From positions 1 through 64,000 of IMG/VR virus record IMGVR_UViG_3300032116_014939: DNA of 64,000 bases. The stretch is one strand, 5' to 3'. Positions within the stretch are counted from its first letter, which is position 1. Every line of letters starts with the position of its first letter. Below the pieces are notes generated by a model. The model made no database searches, had not been told where the DNA came from, and worked only from the letters and a program-made list of their open reading frames with translations. The position numbers and the translations under genes were made by a program. Shown piece by piece: positions 30,534 to 61,707 of this stretch.

Positions 30534-30604
30534 AAGACAAAGATATATCAAAAAAAGTTTAAATTTTATTTTTTTATTCGGGATATTCTATTTATATTTG
30601 TATT

Positions 30605-30752: not shown

Positions 30753-31137
30753 ATACGTAAATTTGGAAATCGTTTTTACCAGTGGTGTAAAATCTTTTCT
30801 TACGGATGGTAGTGACAATATTGATTTGGAAATTATAACAATCTTGTTCTTCTAAATTAGTAACAACATTGAGGAATGGATAATCTTTTTGTGAAACTAC
30901 TATTGATGAATCTTGTCCTAACTCTCCCTCTTTAATACCATTTAATATTTCAGGTAATCCAAGATTTAATATGTTTAAGATTTCATCATTAGTAATTACT
31001 TCATCTTTACCATGTCTAAACCTTTGTGTATTACCATGTGCCGAGTTTTCAATAGACACTTTTACTTTAATGTCCCCAAAAAGCTTTCCAATCCTTTCTT
31101 CCTTTATTATGTTTTTAATACAATTTAAAAGTCTCAT
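30751..31137 (-). CDS. Hypothetical protein
   Basis: 128-aa ORF; TATTTAT at 31142-31148. Confidence 0.7.
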   Translation of the reverse strand: MRLLNCIKNIIKEERIGKLFGDIKVKVSIENSAHGNTQRFRHGKDEVITNDEILNILNLGLPEILNGIKEGELGQDSSIVVSQKDYPFLNVVTNLEEQDCYNFQINIVTTIRKKRFYTTGKNDFQIYV

Positions 31138-31148
31138 AATTATAAATA

Positions 31149-31319
31149 ATGGAAAACATGGAAAATTTAAAAAATTCAGAAGAAAAAACTTGTACTAAAT
31201 GTCAAAAAACAAGACAAAAAATGACACCATATATTATTATGTCTGTAGTTGTTTTAGGTTTAATAATTTATGCTGTAGTCGACATCACAAAAAACATTAT
31301 TGAATTACTTGCTAAGTAA
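31149..31319 (+). CDS. 56-aa CxxC plus TM protein, absent from the ORF track
   Basis: MENMENLKNSEEKTCTKCQK...YIIMSVVVLGLIIYAVV. Confidence 0.55.
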   Translation: MENMENLKNSEEKTCTKCQKTRQKMTPYIIMSVVVLGLIIYAVVDITKNIIELLAK

Positions 31320-33437
31320 TTCAATAATTTTTTCTTTTACCATATCCGATGTTATCTTTTTAGAACATTCAAACATCTTGTCATTTCCTTTATTTATAGG
31401 ACACCAATTCCAATCACCTGGGTCTAATCTAAATTTATTAGCACATCCTCTACAAGTATTTTCAGGTGCGCTTACTTTATAAACGTTTTCATAAGGTTCG
31501 TTAAACTCTTCCGTAAATCCTGATATCAATACCGTTGGGATATCCAAAGCCCATGTAACCCATGAAATACCACTTGATATTCCAATAAAGAATTCACAGG
31601 TGGATAGTTCTTCTATCAGTTTATAGATTGAGCCAGGAGGGTTTTGTTTAGCACCTTTAGGATAATAATTACCCATATACCCATCTTCCTCTTTTGAATA
31701 GATAATCACCTCATAACCAAGAGATATTAGATAATCAGTAATCTCTTGCCACCCATTTGGGTTGTTCCAGTATTTTGATTGGGCAGTTGAGTGAATACCA
31801 AGTCCAACTCGTTTTTTCTTTATCTTATTAGGATTTTTAATTAAAGGTTTTACCTCTTTATATTCTAATCCTAAAATATCTGTTGCAGTTTTTTGTAGTG
31901 GGCCTAATTTGAAATCACTTGGGTGTCTATCCGTTCTAACATTATCACCATCATAGAACCAACCTATCTCATACATTGCATATAGATTATGAACGGTACT
32001 TCCAGGTGAAACAAATTGTATCTCAGGATATTGTTTTACAAATAAATCATTAAAGAATGTTGAACAAATAACCTTACAATTGTGTTTCTTTCTGAATTCC
32101 TCAGCGTAAGGTACCCAAGCAAATGTATCACCCAAAGATTTTGAATCTAATGCAATATATACTCGTTTGTTTTCAGCGTTGTATTTCTTTTCACTGATTA
32201 AATTACCTTCAGAATAAATTTTTAAAGTATATTCATCAAAATACTTCTTACTTAATCTGACCCACATATTACAACCAATCTCCTCACGATATTCACAGTT
32301 ACCATCCTGATTCCAAAACTCAACCAAATATCGTTTATCACTATTACCTTTAATCTCTACCAACGCTCCGTTGATGTAATGATTAATTACTTCAATTTTT
32401 TCAACCATCTCTTTTGGTTTTATTTCAGTATTTTCAAATACTTTATCAAATCTTTGTTTTGTCTCAAGACTATTCAAATTTTTTCTACTGTTAATAAGGT
32501 CTTCGTAAATTCTAACCATCCTTCTGGTAATAACACTCCAATCGTATTTTTGTCTATCTAATTCAGTGTTATTTAAATATAAATCATAGTTGTCAATTAC
32601 TTGTTTAATACCACTAACTATTTGATTTACATCTCTTTCAACTACAACCATTCCTTCTATTGTTTGTGAACCCAAATAAGTACCAACAACTGGCATATTA
32701 CAAGACACAGCTTCTAATAATGTTAGGTTTGGGTGACCAGCTTCTAACATAGAAGGATGTAAGAATATTGAATGACTTTTATATAATTCTAATATCTGTT
32801 CTTCATTCGGATTTGAGAACATTAAAGTTAATTTATCGTAATTTAATAAGTCGTTATGATGTTCAAAAAATATTCTATTGTTTTCAGGGCCGGCAACAGT
32901 AATAGGTAAATCTAATTTGATTGCCGCTTCAATAGCATATCTAAATCCTTTTCTATCGTAGGTTGAATCACCTCCAATACCATTGTTCGCTAAACATAAT
33001 AATTTATGTTCAGTTCTTTTTGGGTTATCATTCTTAAAGAACTCTGTATTAACCCCGTGTGATAAATAAAACAATTTATCTGTTTCATCAAAGTAATCAA
33101 CTAAAAACTCAGCATGAGTAAAAGATACCACAGACCTTTTAATTGCCTCTAAATTTTGTTGGTAGTTAGATGAGTCCTTACCATAATAAACAACGTGGTG
33201 GTCATGTAACGAGAAGATATAAGGGATACCTCTGTTTGCAGCCTCAATAGCTAAGTTAGCCATATGAATATGAATAATATCACTACTATTAATATCCACT
33301 TCATTAAGATATTTTATATCACATTGGTGTCCTAATTCTTTAATGTTATTGTAATATTCCCATATTACTTTTTCAACTGCACCCCATCCATTCGGTGGTA
33401 TTGTAATTATTCCTGGTGTTACTTGTGTTATTCTCAT
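31305..33437 (-). CDS. GT4 glycosyltransferase fused to an Aah/TibC-like O-heptosyltransferase
   Basis: IPPNGWGAVE...LLEA GT-B half; SLGDTFAW, FIGISSGISW and CRGC...WCP...FECSKKI in the C-terminal half. Confidence 0.8.
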   Translation of the reverse strand: MRITQVTPGIITIPPNGWGAVEKVIWEYYNNIKELGHQCDIKYLNEVDINSSDIIHIHMANLAIEAANRGIPYIFSLHDHHVVYYGKDSSNYQQNLEAIKRSVVSFTHAEFLVDYFDETDKLFYLSHGVNTEFFKNDNPKRTEHKLLCLANNGIGGDSTYDRKGFRYAIEAAIKLDLPITVAGPENNRIFFEHHNDLLNYDKLTLMFSNPNEEQILELYKSHSIFLHPSMLEAGHPNLTLLEAVSCNMPVVGTYLGSQTIEGMVVVERDVNQIVSGIKQVIDNYDLYLNNTELDRQKYDWSVITRRMVRIYEDLINSRKNLNSLETKQRFDKVFENTEIKPKEMVEKIEVINHYINGALVEIKGNSDKRYLVEFWNQDGNCEYREEIGCNMWVRLSKKYFDEYTLKIYSEGNLISEKKYNAENKRVYIALDSKSLGDTFAWVPYAEEFRKKHNCKVICSTFFNDLFVKQYPEIQFVSPGSTVHNLYAMYEIGWFYDGDNVRTDRHPSDFKLGPLQKTATDILGLEYKEVKPLIKNPNKIKKKRVGLGIHSTAQSKYWNNPNGWQEITDYLISLGYEVIIYSKEEDGYMGNYYPKGAKQNPPGSIYKLIEELSTCEFFIGISSGISWVTWALDIPTVLISGFTEEFNEPYENVYKVSAPENTCRGCANKFRLDPGDWNWCPINKGNDKMFECSKKITSDMVKEKIIELLSK

Positions 33438-33455
33438 ATTACTATAATAATATTT

Positions 33456-34481
33456 TTAGTTATTAACATAAACAGGTATATTAAAATTTAAAGACAAATC
33501 TTCATATTCTTTTAATGTATTGTTATATATTTGATTATCATCAATAAAAATTCTAATTTCAACGTCGTCAGTATATAATTGATTATCATACGGGTCAATA
33601 ATATCAAATTTATACCAACCATTACTAAAAGTTTCAAAATATTTAAGAATAGTCCTACCTTTATTAAAATTTTGTAAAATTGCAATTTTAATTACAAATT
33701 TATTTTCAGACAATAATTCAACAAAAAAATCAGATATATTTTTTTTAATTTTTATTTCAAAATTTGTTAATTTTTCAGTTAAATTAAAATCAACTATTTC
33801 AGTTTCAAAATTTTTTAAGTATTCACCATAATGTATATCACCAAATGACTGACTCGAATCTCCCCATGAATTAAAAATTTCATCAGAATGATTAGTATGT
33901 CGTTTACTAATTTTTTTGTGGGTAAATAAATCTTTATTTATATAAATTTTTTTATCTACTATTTTGTATTTTCTATTAAAAATAGAATATGATATGTGTT
34001 TTAAATTTTCCGATTTTGACAAATAATAAATGTATTTGTCATAATTATAACCCCACCAAACAGCCTTTTTAAAATGAGATAACCTTATTGCAAAATCATC
34101 ATCTTCAAATTCAGCCCCAATAAATTTCTCATCTAGCATTCCAACCCTTCTAATTAATTCTTTCGAAAATCCAAAAAATCCAAAACTAACAACTGACACA
34201 AAACAATACCCATTTGAAAGTTTATCTATCATAAATTCAATATCTTTAGATGTGAAATTTGTTTTAGGATTACAAAAAATCATAAATTCACTGTCAGTAT
34301 CATCTATCGCATCATTAATCATTTGAGAAAATGAAACATACTTAGATAGATTCCTGTCTTTTCTATACCATCTTTCAATTTGAAATTTATCCGAAAGTTT
34401 TGTTAATTCACATTCTTGTCTTTCAATATCTGTATCATACTGTGACAAAAAACAAAAAGCAAAATTATTAATTACTATCAT
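33456..34481 (-). CDS. GT2-like glycosyltransferase
   Basis: VGMLDEKFIGAEFEDDDFAIR motif. Confidence 0.7.
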   Translation of the reverse strand: MIVINNFAFCFLSQYDTDIERQECELTKLSDKFQIERWYRKDRNLSKYVSFSQMINDAIDDTDSEFMIFCNPKTNFTSKDIEFMIDKLSNGYCFVSVVSFGFFGFSKELIRRVGMLDEKFIGAEFEDDDFAIRLSHFKKAVWWGYNYDKYIYYLSKSENLKHISYSIFNRKYKIVDKKIYINKDLFTHKKISKRHTNHSDEIFNSWGDSSQSFGDIHYGEYLKNFETEIVDFNLTEKLTNFEIKIKKNISDFFVELLSENKFVIKIAILQNFNKGRTILKYFETFSNGWYKFDIIDPYDNQLYTDDVEIRIFIDDNQIYNNTLKEYEDLSLNFNIPVYVNN

Positions 34482-34493
34482 AATATTTTTAAT

Positions 34494-35213
34494 TTATTTT
34501 AAAAATATTTTATTTTCTTTATCAATAAATGACTCACCATCAGCCTGAGTCGTTATTCTCTTCTTTAGAACACCCATAGTTAATCTCTGTTCCGCACATA
34601 TAATATTAAAAAATGTGTCAGCACAGTCCCATCTATGCGTTCTCAACTGATTCATAATTGTTTTACGTGATTTTTTTGAGAACATAATACATTGTAAACC
34701 AATTATTTTATTTGTTATAAACAATAAATCCTGATTAGGTATTTCTCTAACAACATCTGATTGATGCCATCCGTAATCTAAAGTCTTAGTATCACCAAAT
34801 GAAAAATAAGAAATATCTTCCTGATTAACAATACTACAAACCTGATTAACTTTATCTATAAATTCTTCAATTGGAACTTCAATAATACAGTCCCCTTCAC
34901 ATACAATTAAAAAATCCAAATCGTTATCAAATTCTGATAATATCCCAATTTTAAACGCCTCAAAACATCCATAGTGAGCCGGAGTTAAAGCGTTTCCATA
35001 TTCAGGGTCATTAACGTCTTCATATTTACCCATCCTAACATTATGTGGTCTAACACTGGTATGAACAGGTGGTAATGAAATATATAATTCATTTTGATGT
35101 AACACATATTCAATTCCATAAGGAATTACCTGTTGTACAGATTTTCTCGATTCTTTTTCTCTGTGTTCATTTTGTGTTGTCTGTAAATGAACTAATTTAA
35201 TTTTATAATTCAT
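34494..35213 (-). CDS. GT25-like glycosyltransferase
   Basis: HYGCFEAF...IVCEGD pattern. Confidence 0.6.
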   Translation of the reverse strand: MNYKIKLVHLQTTQNEHREKESRKSVQQVIPYGIEYVLHQNELYISLPPVHTSVRPHNVRMGKYEDVNDPEYGNALTPAHYGCFEAFKIGILSEFDNDLDFLIVCEGDCIIEVPIEEFIDKVNQVCSIVNQEDISYFSFGDTKTLDYGWHQSDVVREIPNQDLLFITNKIIGLQCIMFSKKSRKTIMNQLRTHRWDCADTFFNIICAEQRLTMGVLKKRITTQADGESFIDKENKIFLK

Positions 35214-35214
35214 A

Positions 35215-35787
35215 TCAATTTTTTATAAACGAACCCCATAAAACTTGTTTAAAATCATCATACATGTATGTACTTAAATTAAGTTCAGGTAAATATCTTT
35301 CAATATTTTTATAATGCGACTCTGAGTTTGTTGGCCAATTTATTCTTTGTTTAATAACATTATATTCTTCATCACTATGTGAATAATCGTGAAGCATTAT
35401 AACATCATTCTTTTTCAAGTACTTTGAATATAATCGAAACTCAAGTTCCTTGTCCCCACCATCACATAAAAAAAGAGTTCTCCCTGAATTATTAATTAAA
35501 TCACGAATATCTCTCATAATATCAATATCAAAACAATCTCCAATTCTTAATTCAGTGTCTTTAAGATTATTAACTTCACAATAATCAGGATTAATATCGT
35601 AAGAAATTATTTTACAATTGTCTGATTTATTTTCAGACAACCATAAAGTGAACGCACCTGTAAATGTTCCAATTTCAATTATTAATTCGAAATTTTTTAA
35701 TATTTTAGGAAAAACATCAACAACAAATTGACTTTGTGCCGACCTATGATAAGTGGTCTTTGGCACCCATAAAAAATTGTAATCCAT
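35215..35787 (-). CDS. Class I SAM-dependent methyltransferase (CmcI/Methyltransf_24-like)
   Basis: IIEIGTFTG...SYD...CDGG...LHD. Confidence 0.75.
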   Translation of the reverse strand: MDYNFLWVPKTTYHRSAQSQFVVDVFPKILKNFELIIEIGTFTGAFTLWLSENKSDNCKIISYDINPDYCEVNNLKDTELRIGDCFDIDIMRDIRDLINNSGRTLFLCDGGDKELEFRLYSKYLKKNDVIMLHDYSHSDEEYNVIKQRINWPTNSESHYKNIERYLPELNLSTYMYDDFKQVLWGSFIKN

Positions 35788-36554
35788 TATCTTAAAGAAT
35801 TGTTTAAATTATATGATGAATTTTCATCTCCAATATGATAACAAATTCTTTCTGAATGTAAAAAAGATTTGAATCTTTTTGAGAATCTTATTGCAAATTC
35901 TAATTCAAAAGAATCCATATTATTATTAAAAGTGTCAATTTGATTTAATTTATTTACATCATGAATTGCCGGTCTAAAACCAAAGTATGGCCAATTAATA
36001 TATTTAATCCACAATCCCTTAACCGCATGTAAATCTTCTTCAACAGTATCATCAAACAAAGGTTCGTTTAAATAATGTTTATCAGAATAATACCATTCCC
36101 AAAAATTACCAATCACTCTCGGTTGAAATAACTCTTTTGGGAATATCTTTTTTTTCCAAGAGAATCCTACCATACCAACATCTTCATTATTTTTTAATAA
36201 TTCAACTCCTTCATAAAGGTTAAATGGATTTTCAAAAAACCAATCATCTTCCAAATGAAAAACATAATCAATATTAAAAAATTTAATATCTTCTTTCCAT
36301 TTTTTCATTATTTCCAAATGTCTTCGATTAGTATTAAATGAATTAGTATTAAATCTTTTAGACACTATTAAAGTTTCAGGAAATAATCTATTCAGTAAAG
36401 AAAACATTATATCTCTATCTTCTAAAGAAGAAGAATCATCGTAGTGGATTATAATATCAATTAAATTTAAATCTTCACATTCTTTGGTAAAAGAAATTAT
36501 TGTTTTTTCAAATAAATCAATTCGTTTACAAGTTGTTATAGTTAATCCAATCAT
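35787..36554 (-). CDS. GT2-like glycosyltransferase
   Basis: ITTCKR...YDDSS...YVFHLEDDW...HIG. Confidence 0.8.
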   Translation of the reverse strand: MIGLTITTCKRIDLFEKTIISFTKECEDLNLIDIIIHYDDSSSLEDRDIMFSLLNRLFPETLIVSKRFNTNSFNTNRRHLEIMKKWKEDIKFFNIDYVFHLEDDWFFENPFNLYEGVELLKNNEDVGMVGFSWKKKIFPKELFQPRVIGNFWEWYYSDKHYLNEPLFDDTVEEDLHAVKGLWIKYINWPYFGFRPAIHDVNKLNQIDTFNNNMDSFELEFAIRFSKRFKSFLHSERICYHIGDENSSYNLNNSLR

Positions 36555-38287
36555 GAAAAAATAATGTAATCAAGAATATTTTTATTTATAAAATCATATA
36601 AAAATTCATCATCTTGAGTATCGTACACTGATATTTTTTCAACTTTATTTTCAAAAATATTAAATGACCAATGTCCATAATTTTCTAACCCGTGGTATAT
36701 AGTTTCTAAACTACCATCAATATAGTTAACAACTATTTTTCTTTCCGACCTAAAATGATTGTAATTGTAGGATAATAACATTATAGAATTTTGTCCTGAC
36801 ATATTATAAAGTTTTGTAGAACATCCTTTGAATTTTGAAGATACATTACTAACAGTTGTTTCCGTATTCCATAAGGTATTTTGGAAATCAGTGTTCATAT
36901 CAACTTCTCCGTCTTTTCGAATTATTAAACCATAATCTTTTCTATTTATGTTATCATAAAGATATTTTTCAACATTTATAAAGTCAGTACCATACCCATT
37001 ATTTTGTAAATAATTTTTATAATCTTCCTCACAATTAATCCTATTAATTATCTGTTGGAAGTATTCTATTTCACAATAAAAATAATGGAACGAAACATCT
37101 CTACCTTCATTAAAATAAAACATTCCCTTTTTGTTTTGAGTAGAACAAATCACTGGTACAGTTGTCATATATTCATAACCTTCTTCACTATATAAATCAT
37201 CAACTTCAATTCTTTGGAAATGTGTAAACCCAAATGACTTACACAAATCTAATGAGTTAAACAAATTAACCATAACAGGTAATCCATGTTTTTGTATTGT
37301 GTTTGTAACTTCATGAGTTGTTAATGAACCAAGGTTTTTCCAAAAAATAACTGGTTCGGAATTAGTGTATTCACCTTCAAAAAGAATATTATTTGAGTTA
37401 TATAAATGATAATCAACAATTTTTAATATATGTTCAGGAACAATAGTATTAGACACAAGAAGTATTGTATGGTTATACTTTTTTAAGTTATTAACACATA
37501 ACTCCAACTTATTTAAAACATTTTCATTATGAATAAAACAATCAACTATTGTTATTGTTTTAAACTCATCTTTAATATTTTGTTTTTTGAGTTCATTAGA
37601 AACTATTATGTTTTTTTTGTTTTTTTCCTCTTCTGAAACATTTGAAAACATACCATCATTTGATATTCGATAAATTCCCCCACATTTATGAATACACTTA
37701 ATTAAACCGTGTTTACTAATTTCATAATTGAGTGGCCAATCAACATAAGGTAAATTTGTAAAATAATCCTTTATTAAATTTGGAATGTTTCTAAACACCC
37801 TTGCAAAAGATGCGTGATTGATAGTTAATAAATCATTTGTTGTTACATCGTCAAGAAATGAACTAATAAACAATTCAGGCACTGTAGGTATCTTGGTACC
37901 ATCAGGATACAAGTATCTTGTTCCTGTACAGACCATACTATAATTTGGGCTGTTTTCTAAAAACTCAACTTCTTCATTTAAGATTGTATAATTATCAAAA
38001 TAATCATCACCATCAATATATGCAATGTATTTTGTTTTACAGTAATTTAATAAAGTTCTAATATTTTCAAGAGCACCTAAATTAACATCACCATTTAAAA
38101 TAACTAAATCAGGATACTTTTCTTTTAATTCAACTAAAACATCTTTAGTATTGTCTGTTGAACAATCATCTCTAACTACTACCTGAAAACCATAGGTGAT
38201 TTTTTGTTTATAAATTGAATCAACACACTCCTTGAGGTATTTCTCAAAATTATATGACGATACAATGACCGAAAGTAATTTTTCCAT
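36551..38287 (-). CDS. GT2 glycosyltransferase with additional C-terminal domain(s)
   Basis: SVIVSSYN, DDCSTD and YIDGDD motifs. Confidence 0.88.
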   Translation of the reverse strand: MEKLLSVIVSSYNFEKYLKECVDSIYKQKITYGFQVVVRDDCSTDNTKDVLVELKEKYPDLVILNGDVNLGALENIRTLLNYCKTKYIAYIDGDDYFDNYTILNEEVEFLENSPNYSMVCTGTRYLYPDGTKIPTVPELFISSFLDDVTTNDLLTINHASFARVFRNIPNLIKDYFTNLPYVDWPLNYEISKHGLIKCIHKCGGIYRISNDGMFSNVSEEEKNKKNIIVSNELKKQNIKDEFKTITIVDCFIHNENVLNKLELCVNNLKKYNHTILLVSNTIVPEHILKIVDYHLYNSNNILFEGEYTNSEPVIFWKNLGSLTTHEVTNTIQKHGLPVMVNLFNSLDLCKSFGFTHFQRIEVDDLYSEEGYEYMTTVPVICSTQNKKGMFYFNEGRDVSFHYFYCEIEYFQQIINRINCEEDYKNYLQNNGYGTDFINVEKYLYDNINRKDYGLIIRKDGEVDMNTDFQNTLWNTETTVSNVSSKFKGCSTKLYNMSGQNSIMLLSYNYNHFRSERKIVVNYIDGSLETIYHGLENYGHWSFNIFENKVEKISVYDTQDDEFLYDFINKNILDYIIFS

Positions 38288-38874
38288 TATTTAATTTTAT
38301 TTACAGGAACCCCAACATAAGTTCCAGGTTTATCTATATCTTTAACAACACTTCCATTCATCCCAATTATAACATCATCACAAATTGTTATCTTTTCTCT
38401 TATTGATGAGTTATTACCCATATAACAATTATCACCAATTAAAACACTACCTGAAACAACAGAACCAGCCATAGCACTAAAACAATCACCTATTACAACA
38501 TCGTGTCCGATATTAACATTTCTATTTAAAATAGCATGATTACCAATCTTAACATTAGTAGTTATAACACAATTAGCTCCAATAAATGAACCTTCACCAA
38601 TTACAATATTTCTATTCAGTAAAATTGATGATGGGTGGATAAATGAAAAATATTTAGTATCTTCAGGTAATGATTTTTGAATTCTTGACCTAACCTGACT
38701 ATCAGCAATTGCAATCATAATTGAATATTCTTTTGAATTAAATTGTGATAATGGTAATGTTTTATCCTCCCCTTTGAAATACTCATCTTCAACAAATCTA
38801 GTTACATCATAATTTGTATGTGCAATTACTTCCCTTAAATGACCTCCATTACCAATAAACGCTTTCTTAATCAT
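38287..38874 (-). CDS. Sugar O/N-acetyltransferase, NeuD/PglD family
   Basis: IGNGGH, IHPS, hexapeptide repeats, IGHD, YVGVP. Confidence 0.9.
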   Translation of the reverse strand: MIKKAFIGNGGHLREVIAHTNYDVTRFVEDEYFKGEDKTLPLSQFNSKEYSIMIAIADSQVRSRIQKSLPEDTKYFSFIHPSSILLNRNIVIGEGSFIGANCVITTNVKIGNHAILNRNVNIGHDVVIGDCFSAMAGSVVSGSVLIGDNCYMGNNSSIREKITICDDVIIGMNGSVVKDIDKPGTYVGVPVNKIK

Positions 38875-39494
38875 ATTTTTTTTAAATAAAATGCATCACC
38901 CCAAACACCGTCAACATTCCATGTCTCTTGTCTTTGAAATCCAAATGGCAATAAAAACTCATCAAGTTGTTCAATAGACGGACAACCATCATACATTTCA
39001 ATCAAATTAAACTCTGTAAATATATAATCAATATTCTTTAAAGTATTAATTGAACCTTTAAGAGCATTTAACTCATATCCTTGTGTATCTAAAACTAAAA
39101 CATTACAAGAAGTTATATTATAAAAATCTAATGTACTTAAAGTAATGTTAATAGTGTTTTCATCACTAAATTTAATATGTGGGTAAAAACTTTGATGTTC
39201 CTTAGGTTTCAATAATGAAGAACTTTGTTGTCCATTACCTTCATCAAGATACATTTTGTGTATACCATTTCTTTCACCTATCGCAACATTATAATAAAAT
39301 GTGTTAGGTTTACCATTTAAATTTTTAGATAGTTCTTTATACACATGTGGTATAGGTTCAAACCAATATGTAGATATCATACCAAATGTTCTTAAATATT
39401 CATCATACTCTTGACCAACATGGGCACCAACATGAATTACACCAGTAACATTAAAGTTGTACTTATGTTTATATTCGTTGAAACCTACAATCAT
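38871..39494 (-). CDS. FkbM-family methyltransferase
   Basis: HVGAH.G, FEP and LDTQGYEL motifs. Confidence 0.9.
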   Translation of the reverse strand: MIVGFNEYKHKYNFNVTGVIHVGAHVGQEYDEYLRTFGMISTYWFEPIPHVYKELSKNLNGKPNTFYYNVAIGERNGIHKMYLDEGNGQQSSSLLKPKEHQSFYPHIKFSDENTINITLSTLDFYNITSCNVLVLDTQGYELNALKGSINTLKNIDYIFTEFNLIEMYDGCPSIEQLDEFLLPFGFQRQETWNVDGVWGDAFYLKKI

Positions 39495-42091
39495 TTATAG
39501 ATATCAAATTTTGATAGGTCAGGGTATGGTAATTCCAAATCCTCGTTGTGTTTAGGTGTACCATCCATATTATAGAACTGATTCATAAGTAATAAACCTC
39601 TTGAAGCAATTTCAGGCATCATGTAAAAATTCCATCCTAACATGTCAAAATTATCATCATGATATGAAACTTCATTTCTACCTGAGTATCTCGCCCGTTT
39701 AAACCATTTATAAGCCTCAAAGTCATCAGTTAGGATTGCTCCACCCTTACCTAGTTTCAAGTGTTTATACGGTCCAGTAAAAGATAAACACATATGAGTT
39801 CCTGGTATATACATGTCATTGGTGAATCTTAGTGCTGAATCCCAAACATTTGTTGGTGATAGTTGGTAAGCTCCTTTAATCGTAGAACCATAGACTGGTT
39901 CAAATTCAACTTTACCACCAGCATGGATAATCTCACAAGGAACTGATGGATATGTTCTACTTGGTATTTTAATTGTTTTACCAGTAATTTTTTCATAATA
40001 CAATGCTAAGAACAAAGCGTTACTTTGATTATCAATCGTAACTGCGTAAGGTGCTCCTGTATATTCTGCTAATCGTTCTTCAAAACTCTTTGTAACATCA
40101 TAAACGGATTTAGATAGTGTACCAGGTGTTCTTAATTTAACATTTTTAGGTTTAGCAAAAATAACTCCGTGTTTAGCATTTTTATTTGACTTAGTTTTTT
40201 TACCTAATTCATAAACAATAATATCATATTCAAAATTATTTCTATCTAATTTTTCAAGTATAATATTAATTTCACCGTTAGTATTTTCATGAAACTCAAT
40301 CATAAATCTATCCACCAATCCAATTTGTTCATCAGTAATTGATTCAAAAATTGGGTACTCACCACCCTCAATATCACATTTAAATAATGATATCCTACCA
40401 TAGTTATTATCTTTGTAGATATCATCAATAGTAATAGTATCACAACTAATTAAATTATTAAGTTGTCCATATTCTCCCACATTACCGTCAAAAACATTTG
40501 ACCCAATAGTTGAATTTTCTTTTGAAAATCTGAAATCAATCTTGGTATGTTCCTTATAAACAGGATTCATATAGATAGTTGATTTATTCAAATCACCATC
40601 TAAATGATATTCAATACTTTCTCTTAAGTATGGATTTGCTTCAACTAAAATAACTTTTTTAGCGTTTACCGAATACATATACTTAGCAAATAACCCAACA
40701 TTAGCACCAATATCTATTACCGTATCAAGATTTTCTAACTTTAAATCATCAAAACATCTATCAACAAAAAACTCATAATAGTTAATGTAGTTACAGTCCA
40801 AAGGTTTAAATTTAAACTCAGGTATTCTTGGGTAAAAATTAGGATTAACAATCAACTCTTGACCAAAAACTAACTCATTTGTTTGAGAATCATAAAACTC
40901 AACTAAGAATCCTCTAAAATTACGATTATCTTTGAATTTCTTAATGTGTATTGGAATAGGTATTGTCCAATAAAATATTGGGTACTCCAATGGTAAATTA
41001 AACCAATACATTGGAGCCTTTGAAGTCATATCTCTAATACTAACATTAAAATCAAACTTTTGGTTACCGGTATAGTTAATAGTAATTTGATTATTATCAC
41101 CATTGAAACCAAAACTGAAAAGAGAGTCAATACCCCCCACATTTAACACATCCATCATATTATTTACATCTTTATCTATATCTCCAGTTAAAAATGTAAC
41201 TTGAGGTAGTTTATCATATTTTCCACAATACACATCCAAATTATACATCATCATAGGAATACCATATTCAATGGCTTCCTTAATTGCAATTGGATTTAAT
41301 TCTTTATTATTTCTATCACCTTTTGATGGGAACATGAACAAATCGGACGCTTCTAAAAATTCATTTACATTATCCTTTTCACCCCAAACAATACAGTTTT
41401 CAGGTTTATTGTTCATCAATGGTTCCCAATAACTTCTAAAGTTATCTGCTTGATTTCCAATAAAATGAAATTTAATTTTGTTGTTTTCTAACTTACGAGC
41501 AATTTCAAAAATGTATTTTTGATTTTTTCTTTCAGTGAATAACCCGACATTAACAACGTGTTTCCACCCTTTATCGAACCCAAGTTTTTCTTGGAATAAT
41601 TCCTTTCTCTTTTCTCGGTTTTCAATAGGATACTCAATTACCTCATAAGGTATGTCAAACATTGAATACTGAATAGCATTAAACACACTAACAAAAATAA
41701 ACTTGTCAGGAAACCAAACCTTAGATGTTGGTTTGAAACTTGAGTCGTGTGTTGTTTCAAATATTTTGTATGAACGGTTTTGTCTATAAATTTGTCTTGT
41801 AATGTTGTTATCCATGAAAAATTCAGGGAACTCCTCCATCGATATAATATCAGGTTGGAAATCGTTAATAACATTAATCAAAACATTCTTATCATCCCAT
41901 AAAGTGATAAGATTATCTTCACCAATCATATTTTTAATTCTGTTCTTCTGAACAACAAAATCCCATGAATAACATCCGTATTCAATACATTTTATAATAT
42001 AATCATCTTTAAGAAGTTGAATCTTATTTGTAGTAACCTGTGGAAGTCCCCCTGTAGATAGATGTGGGACTATAAATAATATTTTCTTCAT
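39491..42091 (-). CDS. Fusion of GT4 glycosyltransferase, FkbM methyltransferase and DegT/DnrJ-type aminotransferase
   Basis: PHLSTGG...RKNQ...KEA; IDIGANVG...KCDIEGGE; FEERLAEY...DSA...SF...KHL..G.GG. Likely start MKKILF. Confidence 0.85.
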   Translation of the reverse strand: MKKILFIVPHLSTGGLPQVTTNKIQLLKDDYIIKCIEYGCYSWDFVVQKNRIKNMIGEDNLITLWDDKNVLINVINDFQPDIISMEEFPEFFMDNNITRQIYRQNRSYKIFETTHDSSFKPTSKVWFPDKFIFVSVFNAIQYSMFDIPYEVIEYPIENREKRKELFQEKLGFDKGWKHVVNVGLFTERKNQKYIFEIARKLENNKIKFHFIGNQADNFRSYWEPLMNNKPENCIVWGEKDNVNEFLEASDLFMFPSKGDRNNKELNPIAIKEAIEYGIPMMMYNLDVYCGKYDKLPQVTFLTGDIDKDVNNMMDVLNVGGIDSLFSFGFNGDNNQITINYTGNQKFDFNVSIRDMTSKAPMYWFNLPLEYPIFYWTIPIPIHIKKFKDNRNFRGFLVEFYDSQTNELVFGQELIVNPNFYPRIPEFKFKPLDCNYINYYEFFVDRCFDDLKLENLDTVIDIGANVGLFAKYMYSVNAKKVILVEANPYLRESIEYHLDGDLNKSTIYMNPVYKEHTKIDFRFSKENSTIGSNVFDGNVGEYGQLNNLISCDTITIDDIYKDNNYGRISLFKCDIEGGEYPIFESITDEQIGLVDRFMIEFHENTNGEINIILEKLDRNNFEYDIIVYELGKKTKSNKNAKHGVIFAKPKNVKLRTPGTLSKSVYDVTKSFEERLAEYTGAPYAVTIDNQSNALFLALYYEKITGKTIKIPSRTYPSVPCEIIHAGGKVEFEPVYGSTIKGAYQLSPTNVWDSALRFTNDMYIPGTHMCLSFTGPYKHLKLGKGGAILTDDFEAYKWFKRARYSGRNEVSYHDDNFDMLGWNFYMMPEIASRGLLLMNQFYNMDGTPKHNEDLELPYPDLSKFDIYK

Positions 42092-42165
42092 ACCTAAAAA
42101 AAATAACAATATTTATTTCATAAATCCATAGAATACACTATCTTTACAAAAAAATATATAACACA

Positions 42166-42552
42166 ATGAAAAAATTTATCTTATCAATCTTTTTGGTTCT
42201 TTCAACACTATTATCATTCTCTCAAGAAGTAGGTTTTGCTAAAGCCGTAGAACTCTATACAGGCTACAGAGACACAAATAACGAAATCGTATGGAATGGT
42301 TCACCAACATCCGTAGACATCCTGATTAAACTTGAGGATGATAAAGTAACCATCTTTAGTCAACAAACACAAATATATCGTGTTGTTACTAAAATACGTG
42401 ATGAAGAATCAATTATTACTTATAGAATGCTCGATTCAAATGGTATCAATTGTAACTTCCATATGGGACCATCTGAGACTCAAGGTTATATATTTATTGC
42501 AATTGAATACAGTGATTACGCTTGGATGTATCTAACAGAGATAGACGAATAA
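42166..42552 (+). CDS. Secreted hypothetical protein
   Basis: MKKFILSIFL...FSQ signal peptide. Confidence 0.75.
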   Translation: MKKFILSIFLVLSTLLSFSQEVGFAKAVELYTGYRDTNNEIVWNGSPTSVDILIKLEDDKVTIFSQQTQIYRVVTKIRDEESIITYRMLDSNGINCNFHMGPSETQGYIFIAIEYSDYAWMYLTEIDE

Positions 42553-42554
42553 GT

Positions 42555-59250: not shown

Positions 59251-61707
59251 TTGGCATTAAGTTGGTATTCATTTTCGGGTTGTTGTAGTGGAACTACGTT
59301 CCAAATTCAATCAACGTATTCTGCTGGAACGTTCACTTCCGGTTATTCGTATTATTTGGTAACAGATTTTTACACAGGTTGTTCACAATATATAACAACA
59401 GGTTTTGTAACAGGAACACCAATATACAATATTATATCTTTAGATGTAAAATCATATTCATCTTGTACCGCATGTACCACAGTTAATCCTTGTGTCCCCG
59501 GTCCAACACCAACACCTACATCAACACCAGCGCCAAGCCCCACTCCAACAAAAACTCCAACACCTACTCCTACGGTAACAAAAACCCCAACTAATACTCC
59601 AACACAAACTAAAACCCCAACACCAACCAAAACATCAACTAGTACTCCAACACCATCAGTAACCGCAACTATAACACCAACTCCAAGTATAACACCAACT
59701 AATACACCTACAGTAACAAAAACACCAACTAACACCCCAACACCAAGTATTACTCCAACACATACACCAACAAGAACGGTTACCCCAACACCAAGTGTTA
59801 CACCAACAATAACACCAACAGCAACTGTAACAAGTTCACCAACACCAACTTTATCAATAACGCCAACAACAACTCCAACACCAACAGTTACTAAAACACC
59901 TTTACCAACTTTTTGTGAAACACCAACACCAACATTATCAACAACTCCAACATCAACCCCAACACCATCACCTGTATATACCGCATGTCCACAATCGAGT
60001 TATTGTGTATTCACAAATTTGAGTGGTTATACAAATTATGATGGCACTTATTACAACTATGATGTGTTTAATGGTAAAAATGTATTTTATAAACCAGATA
60101 ATACAAATCCTTATTACATATACTACAACACAGGTGAAACAAGATGGTGTCTATCAACTTGTGTAAACGGTGAATGTAAACTATTTGGGCCAACAGGTAG
60201 TAATACCGTTTGCCCTGATTTAGATGTAACCTATTTTGGGTCGTCATGTCCAACACCTACCCCATCAAATACCGACGCTTGTAACACTTTTGATTTTACA
60301 GCAGTATTTGATTGTAACGTAACTTCAGGAGCAACTCCGACACCAACACCAACGTTAACACCAACTAACACACCAACAACAACACCTACACCAACTCCTT
60401 TATGTAATGGTAAATCATTATCGTTTAGTGGTGTAAACTACAATTATCCAGGTCCTTCACCAACACCAAGTGTAACACCGACAAATGCAGTTAAAGGTGT
60501 TGTTGTAAGTGGTTCGGTAATATACGATACGTTTTCATCTAAATTTACAAGTTTATATTCAAAGTTACTTTTAGATTGTAACTCATCTAACAAATACGTT
60601 GTCGGTGAAACAATACCTTTTAATACAGGTTCTACATTTAGCGCAATAATTGATTTTAAATCTGTTTGTGTAACTTACGATTCTGATATTTTAGGTTCCC
60701 CTACTAATATTCTTCAATCTATTGAAAGTGGTAATTTATTTGATTGTGAGTTTTGTTCTCCAATTCCAACCGCAACACCAACACCAACTGTAACACCAAC
60801 ACCAACTGCCACTCAATCATGTCCAAACATAATACAAACAATATCAGTGGGAACAGGTCCATTCTTTATAGTATTTGACGAAGTTAATGAATACATGTAT
60901 GTAATTAACGAAACAAGTAATAATGTTTCAGTAATCGATATTAATGATTACTCTATTGTATCAACAATTTCTGTTGGTAATCAACCTAGAGGTGGGGTAT
61001 TAAGTAATGATAGTAAATTACTATACGTTACTAATTTCGCAGATAATACAATATCAGTTATAAATCCTCTTACACTTACCGTTCTATCAACAATACCTGT
61101 TGGTAATGGCCCTTATGGTTTAACATATGATACAGTTAATGAGGTATTATATGTTGCTGAATATAACGCAGGAACTGTGAGTTCAATACCTGTTAGTACA
61201 ATTGTTAACACTTACACTACCGGTACTAGACCAATTCAACCAGGATTTAATGAAAATAATTTACAAGTATACGTTCCAAATAGTTTAAGTAATACCGTCG
61301 TATCTATTGATACAATAAAAGGTATTACCGCATCAACTATAACAATGCCTTCAGGTTCTTTACCAAGATATTGTTTATATGTTCCAACAAATAATACGGT
61401 ATACACAGTATTAAATGGTACTAACCAAGTAATAACAATTAATCCAGTAACAAATACAACAGGAACAACTATTACAGTTGGTATTGGTACAAATCCTCAA
61501 AGTATGGCATTTGATGTTAATAGTAATAGATTATATGTCACTAATTTAGTAACTGATAATGTATCAGTAATCGATATTAACACTAATGAAGTCGTTAAAA
61601 CAATCACTGTTGGTGACGGTCCAAGAGGTATTGCTTATGACGCTAAATACGATAGAATTTACGTTGAAAATAGTATATCAAATACTGTATCAGTATTATG
61701 TACATAA
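59251..61707 (+). CDS. Cys-rich, Pro/Thr mucin-like protein with a C-terminal YVTN beta-propeller (putative virion surface protein)
   Basis: Long (PT)n tracts; repeated YVxN...VSVID...TI.VG..P.G motifs. Confidence 0.85.
59500..59970 (+). repeat. Low-complexity ACA/CCA coding repeat (Pro-Thr linker)
   Basis: Degenerate TPTPTxTK/TPTNTPT units. Confidence 0.85.

What the first reader, a model, noticed from the sequence alone, without database searches (positions are those of the whole stretch)
31305..42109. 11-kb glycosylation cluster with a protein O-heptosyltransferase-like fusion: probable virion glycosylation
Seen: nine contiguous genes carrying about seven glycosyltransferase domains, three methyltransferase domains, an acetyltransferase and an aminotransferase; RmlB lies elsewhere in the window. 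No Wzx/Wzy/ABC exporter is evident. Established: Aah/TibC-type enzymes heptosylate Ser residues of proteins. Inference: a cytoplasmic pathway builds methylated and acetylated glycans on phage proteins. The Thr/Ser/Pro-rich protein at 59251-61707 is an obvious candidate substrate.
Basis: partly seen in the sequence, partly recalled or inferred. Interest (0 to 1): 0.6.

Follow-up and report, generated by a model that had tools for sequence, protein, structure and literature searches.

The report
Phage glycosylation cluster for serine-rich fibres
A 242-kb aquatic jumbo phage carries a nine-gene, membrane-free sugar-adding gene set whose lead enzyme is a relative of the bacterial protein-glycosylating enzyme TibC; across many phages and bacteria that relative sits beside proteins made of long Gly-Ser-Ser repeats, so the cluster most likely coats the phage's own giant serine-rich fibres with sugars.

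Summary
Window 31305-42109 has nine overlapping or abutting minus-strand genes. They carry up to eight glycosyltransferase(-like) domains (four by Pfam, two by fold, two by language-model lead only), two FkbM methyltransferases plus one weak SAM methyltransferase, a PglD/VioB-like acetyltransferase and a compact DegT-like aminotransferase.

The C-terminal half of the 710-aa protein belongs to the Aah/TibC family (TIGR04414, 264 bits against a cut-off of 200; TibC E=1e-53). The catalytic Asp, the phosphate and sugar contacts and the four iron-finger Cys are kept. The Arg that contacts adenine is not, so the donor may not be ADP-heptose.

The 242-kb record holds no lipid-carrier initiator, no polytopic membrane protein and no DNA-hydroxymethylase, which favours cytoplasmic protein glycosylation.

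Better candidates lie just outside the window: fibre-like proteins of 2636, 1998 and 1370 aa with Gly-(Ser/Thr)-(Ser/Thr) tracts, the longest 486 uninterrupted triplets.

- TibC-like genes occur in 34 of 108 viral records found by that repeat alone, against 1 of 89 generic collagen-like controls (p=2e-9).
- They often lie directly next to the repeat gene, also in methanotrophs and Polaromonas.
- On a tree these enzymes form a clade separate from the classical autotransporter enzymes.

No glycan has been observed; the enzyme-substrate link is inferred.

The parts
31305..33437 (-). g1, 710 aa: fusion of a GT4-type GT-B glycosyltransferase with an Aah/TibC-family protein O-glycosyltransferase
   Evidence: Pfam; NCBIfam TIGR04414 264.5 bits against cut-off 200; PDB TibC E=1.4e-53. 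Present in every relative examined.
32418..33437 (-). g1 N-terminal GT4/GT1 domain (about residues 1-340)
   Evidence: PF00534 E=3e-9, PF13692 E=7e-9
31323..32333 (-). g1 C-terminal TibC-like domain (residues 369-705). Kept: D437, T551, K555, W626 and the iron-finger C662/C665/C679/C691. The adenine-contact Arg of TibC is L607 here.
   Evidence: Alignment to 4rap, motif positions, conservation, residue roles from PMC4358343
33456..34481 (-). g2, 341 aa: probable GT-A-type glycosyltransferase; accessory (absent in several near-identical relatives)
   Evidence: No Pfam/NCBIfam hit. Atlas nearest clusters are viral GT2/Glyco_transf_7C-like, 0.96. Presence/absence.
34494..35213 (-). g3, 239 aa: GT25-like GT-A glycosyltransferase; core gene of the cluster
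   Evidence: AF2 pLDDT 86. Foldseek: COLGALT1 TMq 0.65, Mimivirus R699/R655, LH3. Homologues named 'GR25 family' by JGI. Always present.
35215..35787 (-). g4, 190 aa: weak class-I SAM-dependent methyltransferase; accessory
   Evidence: FtsJ 23.7 bits (cut-off 24.1), Methyltransf_24/31 E about 1e-3
35787..36554 (-). g5, 255 aa: probable GT-A-type glycosyltransferase; accessory
   Evidence: Atlas 0.97, 197 shared features, viral GT2-like clusters. Replaced by a 39%-identical version in some relatives.
36551..38287 (-). g6, 578 aa: GT2 domain (residues 3-235), then a second GT-A-like domain and a beta-sandwich (residues 240-578); core gene
   Evidence: PF00535 E=2.5e-22. C-terminal model pLDDT 88. 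Foldseek hits GnT-I, glycogenin, XylT1. The C-terminal domain is fused to the TibC-like domain in L022/L024.
38287..38874 (-). g7, 195 aa: PglD/VioB/NeuD-type hexapeptide N-acetyltransferase for amino-sugar nucleotides; accessory
   Evidence: Hexapep E=9e-16, PglD_N 24.3 bits; TIGR03570 147 bits, cut-off 160.8
38871..39494 (-). g8, 207 aa: FkbM-family methyltransferase; accessory
   Evidence: PF05050 E=1.5e-16; TIGR01444 60 bits against cut-off 37.7
39491..42109 (-). g9, 872 aa: GT-B glycosyltransferase (residues 8-330; 41120-42088), FkbM methyltransferase (463-627; 40229-40723), compact DegT-like aminotransferase (670-872; 39494-40102); core gene
   Evidence: Pfam. DegT profile positions 23-90 and 165-231 matched. 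The N-terminal GT domain shares an ORF with the TibC-like domain in 8 distant viral loci.
9700..10668 (-). RmlB, dTDP-glucose 4,6-dehydratase: likely supplier of the 4-keto-6-deoxyhexose that the aminotransferase/acetyltransferase pair would use
   Evidence: TIGR01181 401 bits against cut-off 365. No RmlA-type nucleotidyltransferase in the record.
59251..61707 (+).
   Evidence: Pfam; sequence. Pro/Thr-linker ORFs lie near only 1 of 50 loci of this enzyme clade.

Best explanation
The nine genes are a cytoplasmic protein O-glycosylation system that needs no lipid carrier. Its acceptors are most likely the phage's own fibre proteins with enormous collagen-like Gly-(Ser/Thr)-(Ser/Thr) tracts. These are encoded 28-56 kb downstream of the cluster's 42109 end in the same record (G000:C1 70258-78168, 78319-84315, 93651-97763).

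Proposed order of events, all inferred:
1. The TibC-like domain of g1 puts the first sugar on Ser/Thr hydroxyls of the repeats, using Asp437 as the base.
2. The GT4 domain fused to it, and the core enzymes g9 (GT-B), g6 (two GT-A domains) and g3 (GT25-like), extend the glycan.
3. RmlB, the compact DegT-like domain of g9 and the PglD/VioB-like g7 would make an N-acetylated 4-amino-4,6-dideoxyhexose donor from host dTDP-glucose.
4. The FkbM/SAM methyltransferases O-methylate the glycan.
5. The accessory genes (g2, g4, g5, g7, g8) are swapped in and out between near-identical phages, so the glycan differs from strain to strain.

Shown here: the domain identities, conservation of the catalytic residues, absence of export machinery from the record, and the statistical, positional and phylogenetic link between this enzyme clade and the repeat proteins.

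Inferred: that the fibres are glycosylated at all, the sugar identities, the order of steps, and that the fibres are part of the virion.
For: 1. Family identity: TIGR04414 is above cut-off, and TibC matches at E=1e-53. Across 63 non-redundant domains, D110 is kept in 62, T226 in 62 (one Ser), K230 in all 63, W305 in 62 and each of the four Cys in 62.
2. Candidate acceptors: three ORFs hold 1461, 1521 and 174 aa of G-[ST]-[ST] triplets, the longest uninterrupted run being 1458 aa. They have no signal peptide and lie in the minus-strand block that also holds the tail sheath, tube and baseplate hub.
3. Reverse association: of IMG/VR records found only by a (GGN WSN WSN)x8 DNA pattern, 34 of 108 carry a TibC-family gene. 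Of records found by a generic (GGNNNNNNN)x8 pattern, 1 of 89 does (Fisher p=2e-9). That single control positive is the only Ser/Thr-rich control locus. For records of 50 kb or more the counts are 22 of 37 against 1 of 23.
4. Adjacency: the repeat ORF lies 30-70 bp from the TibC-like ORF on the same strand in L022, L024, L025 and L076, and about 310 bp away in G146. In L023 two homologues of the 2636-aa fibre lie directly upstream.
5. The same pairing is seen in cellular genomes. In Methylobacter, Methylomicrobium, Polaromonas, Burkholderiaceae and Arenicellales, the gene is flanked within 0-180 bp by a signal-peptide or lipoprotein ORF with (G-T/S-S/T)n tracts.
6. Tree: all 35 repeat-adjacent rows fall in one 50-row clade (SH-aLRT 95). 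It is separate from a 13-row clade that holds the Citrobacter locus (whose ORF just downstream is autotransporter-sized) and the other rows with no repeat neighbour.
7. Fusions tie g9-type and g6-type GT domains to the TibC-like domain in other phages.
8. No Bac_transf, no WecA/MraY, and no ORF with more than 4 hydrophobic segments in 242 kb.
9. More glycosyltransferases sit among the fibre genes, among them a PF11397/GT60 member (a family of polypeptide O-GlcNAc transferases), E=2.7e-68.
10. The only cultured phage with this domain, Microcystis phage Mel-JY01, has an open frame of at least 1016 aa with the same repeats 1.7 kb upstream of it.
Against: - No glycan, glycopeptide or virion proteome exists for this phage. 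Everything rests on sequence.
- In this genome the cluster and the fibre genes are 37 kb apart, not adjacent.
- Only about a third of repeat-bearing records have the enzyme. Most are fragments, but 5 of 11 records at least 90% complete also lack it, so the repeats do not strictly need it.
- Matches of the fibres to tail-fibre PHROGs come from the low-complexity repeat itself. The globular N-terminal domain has only unannotated relatives.
- Related phages share both traits by descent, so the Fisher test overstates independence. The spread over viral and bacterial lineages on the tree mitigates this but does not remove it.
- TibC acts on a folded beta-helix as a dodecamer; whether this clade can act on a Gly-Ser-Ser tract is untested.
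- The complex prediction could not be run.
- g2 and g5 are called glycosyltransferases only on a language-model lead.
Confidence: 0.6

Rival explanations
1. The cluster remodels a host surface polysaccharide (O-antigen, capsule or T9SS-linked glycan) during infection, for example to block superinfection. This is how glycosyltransferase clusters near the tail-fibre genes of aquatic myophages are usually read.
For: GT2, GT4, FkbM, PglD-like and RmlB genes are the normal content of O-antigen loci. Cassette-like gain and loss of accessory genes between near-identical phages resembles serotype loci. The pelagimyophage literature adopts this reading (PMC7029224). The host is probably a Bacteroidota member with T9SS.
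Against: No initiating phosphoglycosyltransferase, flippase, polymerase, ligase or any polytopic membrane protein is found in 242 kb. All nine proteins are soluble. The lead enzyme belongs to a family known only to glycosylate proteins (PMC4358343). This enzyme clade tracks Gly-Ser-Ser repeat genes, not polysaccharide genes. The record is 82% complete, so missing genes are not fully excluded, and host enzymes could supply the missing steps.
Confidence: 0.12
2. The cluster glycosylates proteins, but not the Gly-Ser-Ser fibres. The acceptors would be the Pro/Thr-linker protein at 59251-61707, capsid or tail-tube subunits as in mycobacteriophages, or host proteins.
For: Pro/Thr linkers are O-glycosylated in some bacteria (my own knowledge). 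Mycobacteriophage capsid and tail-tube glycosylation is documented (Freeman et al. 2023, cited in PMC12619734). The cluster is not adjacent to the fibre genes in this genome. Other Ser/Thr-rich structural proteins exist (S+T fraction 0.20-0.31).
Against: Pro/Thr-linker ORFs lie near only 1 of 50 loci of this enzyme clade, against 35 of 50 for the repeat ORFs. There is no comparable neighbourhood signal for capsid genes. The pairing with the repeats recurs in bacteria that have no phage structural genes nearby.
Confidence: 0.15
3. The enzymes glycosylate phage DNA (hypermodified bases) to evade restriction.
For: Phage glycosyltransferases often do this. A weak TET-associated-glycosyltransferase match (E=0.0027, below cut-off) lies in a gene outside the cluster at 85949-87619. 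A dUTPase lies in the second sugar cluster.
Against: No thymidylate-synthase-type hydroxymethylase is present. No Tet/JBP match was found, though the control genomes were silent, so this is weak. A Dam methylase is present instead. The TibC family and the repeat association point to protein. Eight GT domains plus methyl, acetyl and amino tailoring far exceed known DNA sugar modifications.
Confidence: 0.03

Closest known systems
TibC / Aah bacterial autotransporter heptosyltransferases (BAHT; TIGR04414; PDB 4rap/4rb4; PMC4358343)
   Same: Homologous over about 320 residues (about 40% identity). It passes the curated family cut-off. The catalytic Asp, the beta-phosphate Thr/Lys, the sugar-contact Trp and the four iron-finger Cys are conserved. 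The enzyme is cytoplasmic, and in many relatives its gene lies next to the presumed substrate gene, as tibC-tibA and aah-aidA do.
   Different: It falls in a separate clade from the Citrobacter, Selenomonadaceae and Acetobacteraceae rows that stand for the classical enzymes. The adenine-contact Arg286 is Leu, and mostly I/V/L/T across the clade. The domain is fused to a second glycosyltransferase. The neighbour is a Gly-Ser/Thr-Ser/Thr repeat protein, not an autotransporter beta-helix. No heptose-synthesis genes are present. Dodecamer formation is untested.
BclA exosporium nap of Bacillus anthracis (collagen-like glycoprotein with anthrose-capped oligosaccharides; PMC6222408)
   Same: A collagen-like triplet-repeat filament protein O-glycosylated on the hydroxy amino acid of the repeat. 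Its capping sugar is a methylated, N-acylated 4-amino-4,6-dideoxyglucose, the kind of sugar that RmlB + aminotransferase + acyltransferase + methyltransferase here could make.
   Different: The repeat differs (Gly-Pro-Thr against Gly-Ser/Thr-Ser). The glycosyltransferases are unrelated and none is TibC-like. BclA is a bacterial spore protein, not a phage protein. The sugar identity here is only inferred.
Mimivirus/Megavirinae fibril glycosylation clusters (PMC10117803, PMC8456856)
   Same: A virus-encoded, host-independent, clade-variable gene cluster makes rare bacterial-type amino-deoxy sugars (viosamine, methylated and acetylated forms) and decorates long surface fibrils. The g3 model resembles Mimivirus R699/R655 and collagen glycosyltransferases.
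   Different: The host is eukaryotic and the particle is a giant icosahedral virus. The fibril proteins are GMC oxidoreductases. No TibC-like enzyme has been reported there.
Mycobacteriophage virion glycosylation (Freeman et al. 2023, cited in PMC12619734)
   Same: Phage-encoded glycosyltransferases modify the phage's own structural proteins in the cytoplasm.
   Different: That system uses one or two glycosyltransferases acting on C-terminal tails of capsid and tail-tube subunits. It has no TibC-like enzyme, no repeat fibres and no tailoring enzymes.
Serine-rich-repeat adhesin glycosylation (GtfA/GtfB and followers) in Gram-positive cocci (my own knowledge, not tested here)
   Same: Cytoplasmic, sequential O-glycosylation of very long Ser-rich repeats by a GT4-type initiator and several extending glycosyltransferases.
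   Different: The initiator family differs, and the substrate is exported by an accessory Sec system. No homology was tested.
'Moraphages', large aquatic phages with DnaK/DnaJ and four core glycosyltransferase groups (PMC12619734)
   Same: A large aquatic phage with a DnaJ gene next to the cluster, Bacteroidota host signals and many glycosyltransferases.
   Different: Membership was not tested. That paper mentions neither TibC-like enzymes nor repeat fibres.

Membership tests
Aah/TibC autotransporter O-heptosyltransferases (BAHT, TIGR04414) | Score above the curated equivalog cut-off | tested here: met
   264.5 bits against cut-off 200, profile positions 28-372 of 374
Aah/TibC autotransporter O-heptosyltransferases (BAHT, TIGR04414) | Catalytic base Asp110; beta-phosphate Thr226/Lys230; sugar-contact Trp305 | tested here: met
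   D437, T551, K555, W626. Conserved in at least 123 of 125 nearest homologues.
Aah/TibC autotransporter O-heptosyltransferases (BAHT, TIGR04414) | Four-Cys iron-finger motif (C339, C342, C358, C370) | tested here: met
   C662, C665, C679, C691. Iron binding itself cannot be tested here.
Aah/TibC autotransporter O-heptosyltransferases (BAHT, TIGR04414) | Arg286 contacting adenine N1 (basis of ADP-sugar specificity) | tested here: not met
   L607 here. Arg in 12 of 13 classical-clade domains but only 5 of 50 in this clade.
Aah/TibC autotransporter O-heptosyltransferases (BAHT, TIGR04414) | ADP-heptose as donor | not testable with these tools
   No GmhA (SIS_2) or HldE-type (CTP_transf_like) gene in the record. 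The host supply is unknown.
Aah/TibC autotransporter O-heptosyltransferases (BAHT, TIGR04414) | Partner substrate is an AIDA/TibA-type autotransporter encoded next to the enzyme | tested here: not met
   No such neighbour. In this clade the recurrent neighbour is a Gly-Ser/Thr-Ser/Thr repeat protein.
Aah/TibC autotransporter O-heptosyltransferases (BAHT, TIGR04414) | N-terminal beta-barrel (residues 1-97), beta-hairpin thumb and dodecameric ring | tested here: inconclusive
   The alignment starts at TibC residue 62 / profile position 28, and the upstream part is replaced by a GT4 domain. The oligomeric state cannot be tested.
Lipid-carrier polysaccharide pathways (Wzx/Wzy or ABC type) | Initiating phosphoglycosyltransferase (Bac_transf or WecA/MraY family) | tested here: not met
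   No match in 242 kb, while the control genomes ring
Lipid-carrier polysaccharide pathways (Wzx/Wzy or ABC type) | Polytopic flippase, polymerase or ligase | tested here: not met
   No ORF with more than 4 hydrophobic 19-mers among 250 ORFs. This is a crude hydropathy test on a record 82% complete.
Phage DNA sugar hypermodification | Base hydroxymethylase (thymidylate-synthase family) or Tet/JBP oxygenase that creates the acceptor | tested here: not met
   PF00303 has no match and the controls ring. PF12851 has no match but the controls were silent, so that half is inconclusive.
dTDP-4-acetamido-4,6-dideoxyhexose (viosamine-type) donor pathway | RmlA, RmlB, a sugar aminotransferase and an N-acetyltransferase | tested here: inconclusive
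   RmlB is met and RmlA is absent. The aminotransferase is a shortened DegT domain of about 200 aa. The acetyltransferase scores 147 bits against a cut-off of 160.8.
Collagen triple-helix repeat proteins (PF01391) | Gly-X-Y triplet tract recognised by the family model | tested here: met
   30.7 bits against cut-off 27.2 on the short tract of the 1998-aa protein. Uninterrupted 486-triplet tract. Triple-helix formation is untested, and there is no Pro in X or Y.

The most novel reading that the evidence does not exclude
A sister clade of the autotransporter heptosyltransferases, found in aquatic phages and in free-living bacteria (methanotrophs, Polaromonas and others), is a dedicated O-glycosyltransferase for collagen-like (Gly-Ser/Thr-Ser/Thr)n proteins and uses a donor other than ADP-heptose. 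In jumbo phages it seeds a strain-variable, methylated and acetylated glycan coat on fibres that could reach about 0.4 micrometre. That would be a phage counterpart of the Mimivirus fibril layer and the BclA nap. It would also mean that many 'LPS-modifying' glycosyltransferase clusters in the tail-fibre regions of aquatic phages dress the virion instead.
Probability: 0.45. Interest if true: 0.8.

Novelty: new variant of a known kind. Interest (0 to 1): 0.7.

Why it matters
Glycosyltransferase clusters in large aquatic phages are common and are usually put down to host-surface or DNA modification without a test. This work gives a specific, testable alternative with a named enzyme and a named substrate class.

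Three things follow:
- The Aah/TibC family would gain a second substrate type. It has been known only from enterobacterial virulence adhesins.
- Glycan-coated fibres could affect host recognition, and a glycan that varies between near-identical phages points to diversifying selection on a surface-exposed structure.
- The pairing occurs in the cultured Microcystis phage Mel-JY01 and in isolated methanotroph strains (Methylobacter luteus IMV-B-3098, Methylomicrobium sp. Wu6), so it can be tested at the bench now.

The word search found 3705 proteins with this domain at E <= 0.001 within the searched length range, so the phenomenon is not rare.

Tried and rejected
- Megablast of the cluster against GenBank phages: no match.
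- Sigma-70 promoter and terminator scan of 30300-43600: fewer promoter-like sites than in shuffles, so uninformative. Bacteroidota-type promoters are not covered.
Nothing can be said either way.
- Sequence search of PDB with the g3 profile: nothing. The fold search then gave a GT-A/GT25-like result.
- Fibre-1 N-terminal domain against PDB sequences, NCBIfam and annotated phages: no informative hit. A virion role could therefore not be confirmed by homology.
- Pro/Thr-rich protein as substrate: rejected as the leading candidate on neighbourhood counts.
- DNA glycosylation: rejected as the leading reading.
- ADP-heptose self-supply: no GmhA or HldE-type genes.
- One call with a wrong reference was an error.
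- Sequencing-run and read-laying tools were not used.


Full report
**What the window is.** The window is the first 64 kb of a 242,064-bp IMG/VR virus record (linear, CheckV 82% complete, 32% G+C). It is a tailed jumbo phage. The record holds a 1063-aa tail sheath, a tail tube and a baseplate hub, 14 tRNA genes, DnaJ, a Dam methylase, primase-like and SbcC-like genes. Host signals point to Bacteroidota: a T9SS C-terminal sorting domain on a small Kazal-domain protein and SprB repeats in fibre-like proteins. A recent paper describes a lineage of large aquatic phages ('moraphages') with DnaJ/DnaK, predicted Flavobacteriales hosts and four core glycosyltransferase groups. It does not mention TibC-like enzymes (PMC12619734). 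I did not test membership of that lineage.

Nine minus-strand ORFs fill 31305-42109 with overlaps of 0-4 bp or gaps of at most 18 bp.

Curated models identify:
- a GT4 and a GT9-type domain in g1;
- a GT2 in g6;
- a GT1-type domain, an FkbM domain and part of a DegT domain in g9;
- an FkbM methyltransferase (g8);
- a hexapeptide/PglD_N acetyltransferase (g7);
- a weak class-I methyltransferase (g4).

Three ORFs and the C-terminal 340 residues of g6 had no family hit.
- g3 folds with confidence (pLDDT 86) into a GT-A domain. Its best structural neighbours are the collagen hydroxylysine galactosyltransferase COLGALT1 (GT25), Mimivirus R699/R655 and LH3.
- The g6 C-terminus (pLDDT 88) is a second GT-A-like domain followed by a beta-sandwich.
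- g2 and g5 are placed among viral GT-A/GT2-like clusters only by the Atlas language-model search (0.96 and 0.97). That is a lead, not a test.

The cluster therefore has up to eight glycosyltransferase(-like) domains. None of the nine proteins has a membrane-spanning-like segment. RmlB at 9700-10668 passes its equivalog cut-off.

**The TibC-like domain is genuine but not classical.** Residues 369-705 of g1 score 264.5 bits on TIGR04414 (cut-off 200) and match TibC (4rap) at E=1.4e-53. The TibC structure paper gives the residue roles (PMC4358343). The catalytic base Asp110, the beta-phosphate contacts Thr226 and Lys230, the heptose-O4 contact Trp305 and the four iron-finger cysteines are all present: D437, T551, K555, W626, C662, C665, C679, C691. 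They are nearly invariant in the 125 nearest domains. Arg286, which hydrogen-bonds adenine N1 and is given as the basis for ADP-sugar specificity, is Leu607. The position that sets heptose stereoselectivity (Pro300 in TibC, Ser294 in Aah) is Ser621. The record has no GmhA-type or HldE-type genes. I therefore call the domain a TibC-family protein O-glycosyltransferase and leave the donor open.

**What the cluster does not look like.** The whole record lacks a Bac_transf or WecA/MraY-type initiator. It has no ORF with more than four hydrophobic segments, so no flippase, polymerase or ligase candidate. It also lacks a thymidylate-synthase-type hydroxymethylase. The Tet/JBP search found nothing, but its controls were silent. 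This argues against a lipid-linked polysaccharide pathway and against DNA sugar modification. The limits of the argument are an 82%-complete record and possible help from host enzymes.

**The likely substrate lies just outside the window.** Scanning all 250 ORFs of the record for composition turned up two giant proteins with 45% and 52% Ser+Thr.
- G000:C1 70258-78168 encodes 2636 aa: a globular N-terminal part of about 1080 aa, then 1461 aa of Gly-X-Y triplets.
- G000:C1 78319-84315 encodes 1998 aa, with one uninterrupted tract of 1458 aa (486 triplets).
- G000:C1 93651-97763 encodes 1370 aa, of which 174 aa are such triplets.

Taking the two giant proteins together, X is Ser in about 72% of triplets and Thr in 25%; Y is Ser in about 84%. 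The tracts score on Pfam Collagen (30.7 against 27.2 bits) and on 'collagen-like minor tail' and tail-fibre PHROGs, although those matches rest on the repeat itself. If the long tract were a collagen-type helix at about 0.29 nm per residue, it would span about 0.4 micrometre. That figure is my own inference. The proteins have no signal peptide. They lie in the long minus-strand block that holds the tail genes, lectin-like and SprB-repeat proteins and three more glycosyltransferase genes. One of these is a PF11397/GT60 member (E=2.7e-68), a family that holds the cytoplasmic Skp1 hydroxyproline GlcNAc-transferase (Pfam's description; the trypanosome mucin Thr enzyme is from my own knowledge).

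**Test of the enzyme-repeat link.**

*From enzyme to repeat.* Among IMG/VR loci found with g1, the close relatives have no repeat within 10 kb. Of the 16 distant loci, 10 do. In L022, L024 and L025 the repeat ORF starts 55-70 bp after the TibC-like ORF on the same strand. In L023 two homologues of the 2636-aa fibre lie directly upstream.

*From repeat to enzyme.* I scanned IMG/VR with a DNA pattern for eight Gly-(Ser/Thr)-(Ser/Thr) codon triplets and searched the whole records of the hits for TIGR04414. 34 of 108 records were positive, 32 of them above the curated cut-off.

*Control.* Records found with a pattern for any eight Gly-X-Y triplets are almost all Pro-, Gln-, Asp- or Lys-rich collagen-like genes. 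1 of 89 was positive, and that record is the single Ser/Thr-rich control locus, with the repeat starting 310 bp after the enzyme gene. Fisher's test gives p=2e-9. For records of at least 50 kb the counts are 22 of 37 against 1 of 23 (p=1e-5).

*Distances.* Where coordinates were listed, the two genes are mostly 0.03-9 kb apart.

**The pairing extends to bacteria and defines a clade.** A scan of one genome per prokaryote species with a profile of the domain gave 60 loci. In the 40-46%-identical loci of Methylobacter, Methylomicrobium, other Methylococcales, Polaromonas and Burkholderiaceae, and in the 37-40%-identical Arenicellales and related gammaproteobacterial loci, an ORF of 100-340 aa lies within 0-180 bp of the gene. 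That ORF has a signal peptide or lipoprotein box followed by (Gly-Thr/Ser-Ser/Thr)n. The 33-37%-identical enterobacterial, Selenomonadaceae and Acetobacteraceae loci have none. The Citrobacter loci have a large autotransporter-sized ORF just downstream instead.

A quick maximum-likelihood tree of 63 non-redundant domains splits into two groups, each supported at SH-aLRT 95 (the careful search did not finish, and the root is at the midpoint):
- a 13-row 'classical' group with no repeat neighbour;
- a 50-row group that holds all 35 repeat-adjacent rows, 15 viral and 20 from genome records.

The adenine-contact Arg is present in 12 of 13 classical rows and 5 of 50 rows of the other group. All other key residues are shared.

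**The rest of the cluster is tied to the TibC-like enzyme.**
- In distant phages the TibC-like domain shares its ORF with a g9-type GT-B domain (eight loci) or a g6-C-type GT-A domain (two loci). In L032 the g9-type gene is the immediate upstream neighbour.
- Database architectures also include GT4-FkbM-TibC-like and methyltransferase-TibC-like fusions.
- Among relatives whose flanking genes are 92-100% identical, g1, g3, g6 and g9 are found in every locus that covers their position. g2, g4, g5, g7 and g8 are present, absent or replaced in at least five arrangements.

That pattern fits a conserved initiation-and-extension core with variable tailoring, as expected for an exposed glycan under diversifying selection.

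**A plausible donor branch (inferred).** Host dTDP-glucose would be converted in three steps: RmlB makes the 4-keto-6-deoxyhexose, the compact DegT-like domain aminates it, and g7 N-acetylates it. By my reading of the g9 sequence printed, that domain keeps the region of the PLP-lysine motif. O-methylation by the FkbM enzymes would follow. This parallels anthrose on BclA (PMC6222408) and methylated N-acetylviosamine on Mimivirus fibrils (PMC10117803, PMC8456856).

**Wider picture in this genome.** A second sugar cluster lies at 160.8-177 kb on the plus strand. It has about seven more glycosyltransferase genes, a WecB-like 2-epimerase, a GDP-mannose 4,6-dehydratase-like enzyme, a second compact DegT, an RmlD-like reductase and a methyltransferase. 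With the three genes in the fibre block, the phage spends about 30 kb on glycan genes.

**Known or new.** TibC-like genes in phage contigs already carry automatic names: JGI's 'autotransporter strand-loop-strand O-heptosyltransferase' and one NCBI 'Glycosyltransferase Aah/TibC [uncultured Caudovirales phage]'. Only 4 of 50,697 GenBank phage records have the domain: Microcystis phage Mel-JY01 and three huge uncultured phages. In Mel-JY01 the gene is annotated 'methyltransferase FkbM'. The repeat region upstream is annotated on the wrong strand as hypothetical proteins with Pro-Glu-Val-Pro repeats, while the plus-strand frame is open for at least 1016 aa with Gly-Ser-Ser tracts. Full-text searches found no paper linking heptosyltransferases with collagen-like proteins in phages. 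The pelagimyophage literature reads such glycosyltransferases as host O-chain modifiers. I rate this a new variant of a known kind.

Noticed in passing
G000:C1 70258-78168, 78319-84315, 93651-97763 (same record, beyond the window's end): Three minus-strand ORFs of 2636, 1998 and 1370 aa with Gly-(Ser/Thr)-(Ser/Thr) triplet tracts. The longest is 486 uninterrupted triplets, and the two giant proteins together hold about 1700 Ser. These became the proposed substrates.
   Followed up: yes
G000:C1 160793-176874, plus strand: A second sugar cluster: about seven glycosyltransferase genes, a WecB-like UDP-GlcNAc 2-epimerase, a GDP-mannose 4,6-dehydratase-like enzyme, a second compact DegT, an RmlD-like reductase and a methyltransferase. 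A PolB-type exonuclease and a dUTPase are interspersed.
   Followed up: partly
G000:C1 89724-90968 (also 85949-87619 and 87616-88179): A PF11397/GT60 glycosyltransferase (polypeptide O-GlcNAc-transferase family, E=2.7e-68; phrog_24687 E=8e-171) lies among the fibre genes, with homologues 75-77% identical near TibC-like genes in distant phages. Next to it are an HtrL/YibB-like protein with a weak TAGT-like match and a weak GT2.
   Followed up: partly
L285 = Microcystis phage Mel-JY01 PP395634.1, 1-3052 and 9361-9898: The GenBank annotation calls minus-strand hypothetical CDSs with Pro-Glu-Val-Pro repeats over what reads on the plus strand as an open frame of at least 1016 aa with Gly-Ser-Ser tracts. 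The TibC-like fusion (4750-8430) is annotated 'methyltransferase FkbM'.
   Followed up: partly
L290-L319, L345 (Methylobacter, Methylomicrobium, Polaromonas, Burkholderiaceae, Arenicellales genomes): Small secreted or lipoprotein ORFs with (Gly-Thr/Ser-Ser/Thr)n tracts lie within 0-180 bp of a TibC-clade gene in free-living bacteria. This looks like an undescribed bacterial enzyme-substrate pair.
   Followed up: partly
window 39494-40102 (g9 C-terminus) and G000:C1 169997-170605: Two DegT-family domains of only about 200 aa (the profile is 360 long). They match profile positions about 23-90 and 165-243, as if the segment between were deleted. Whether they are active aminotransferases is unknown.
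   Followed up: partly
window 10974-11444: A 156-aa protein with a Kazal-type inhibitor motif and a T9SS C-terminal sorting domain (Por_Secre_tail, E=3e-12). It is a phage gene that would use the host's type IX secretion, which implies a Bacteroidota host.
   Followed up: no
window 775-3956: An array of 14 tRNA genes on the minus strand.
   Followed up: no
window 11815-12657: A peptidoglycan-binding domain plus a glycoside hydrolase family 19 (chitinase class I / lysozyme-like) domain: a probable endolysin.
   Followed up: no
window 28156-30372 and 42555-43475: The cluster is flanked by a leucine-rich-repeat protein and a Dam-type N6-adenine methylase on one side and a full DnaJ (J, CXXCXGXG and C-terminal domains) on the other.
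   Followed up: no
G000:C1 66910-69607: Three tandem paralogues of 292-302 aa, two of which match the Gly_rich_2 domain (PF21722) and all of which have Gly-rich C-termini, lie just upstream of the giant fibre genes.
   Followed up: no
L287 (CAIWBA010000291.1, 254,203-bp contig in a 'Bacteroidetes' MAG) and L286, L288, L289, L331: The best 'bacterial' matches to the phage TibC-like domain (52-56% identity) sit on low-GC contigs, and in the tree they cluster with viral rows. One contig is of jumbo-phage size. They are probably phage contigs binned into MAGs.
   Followed up: no
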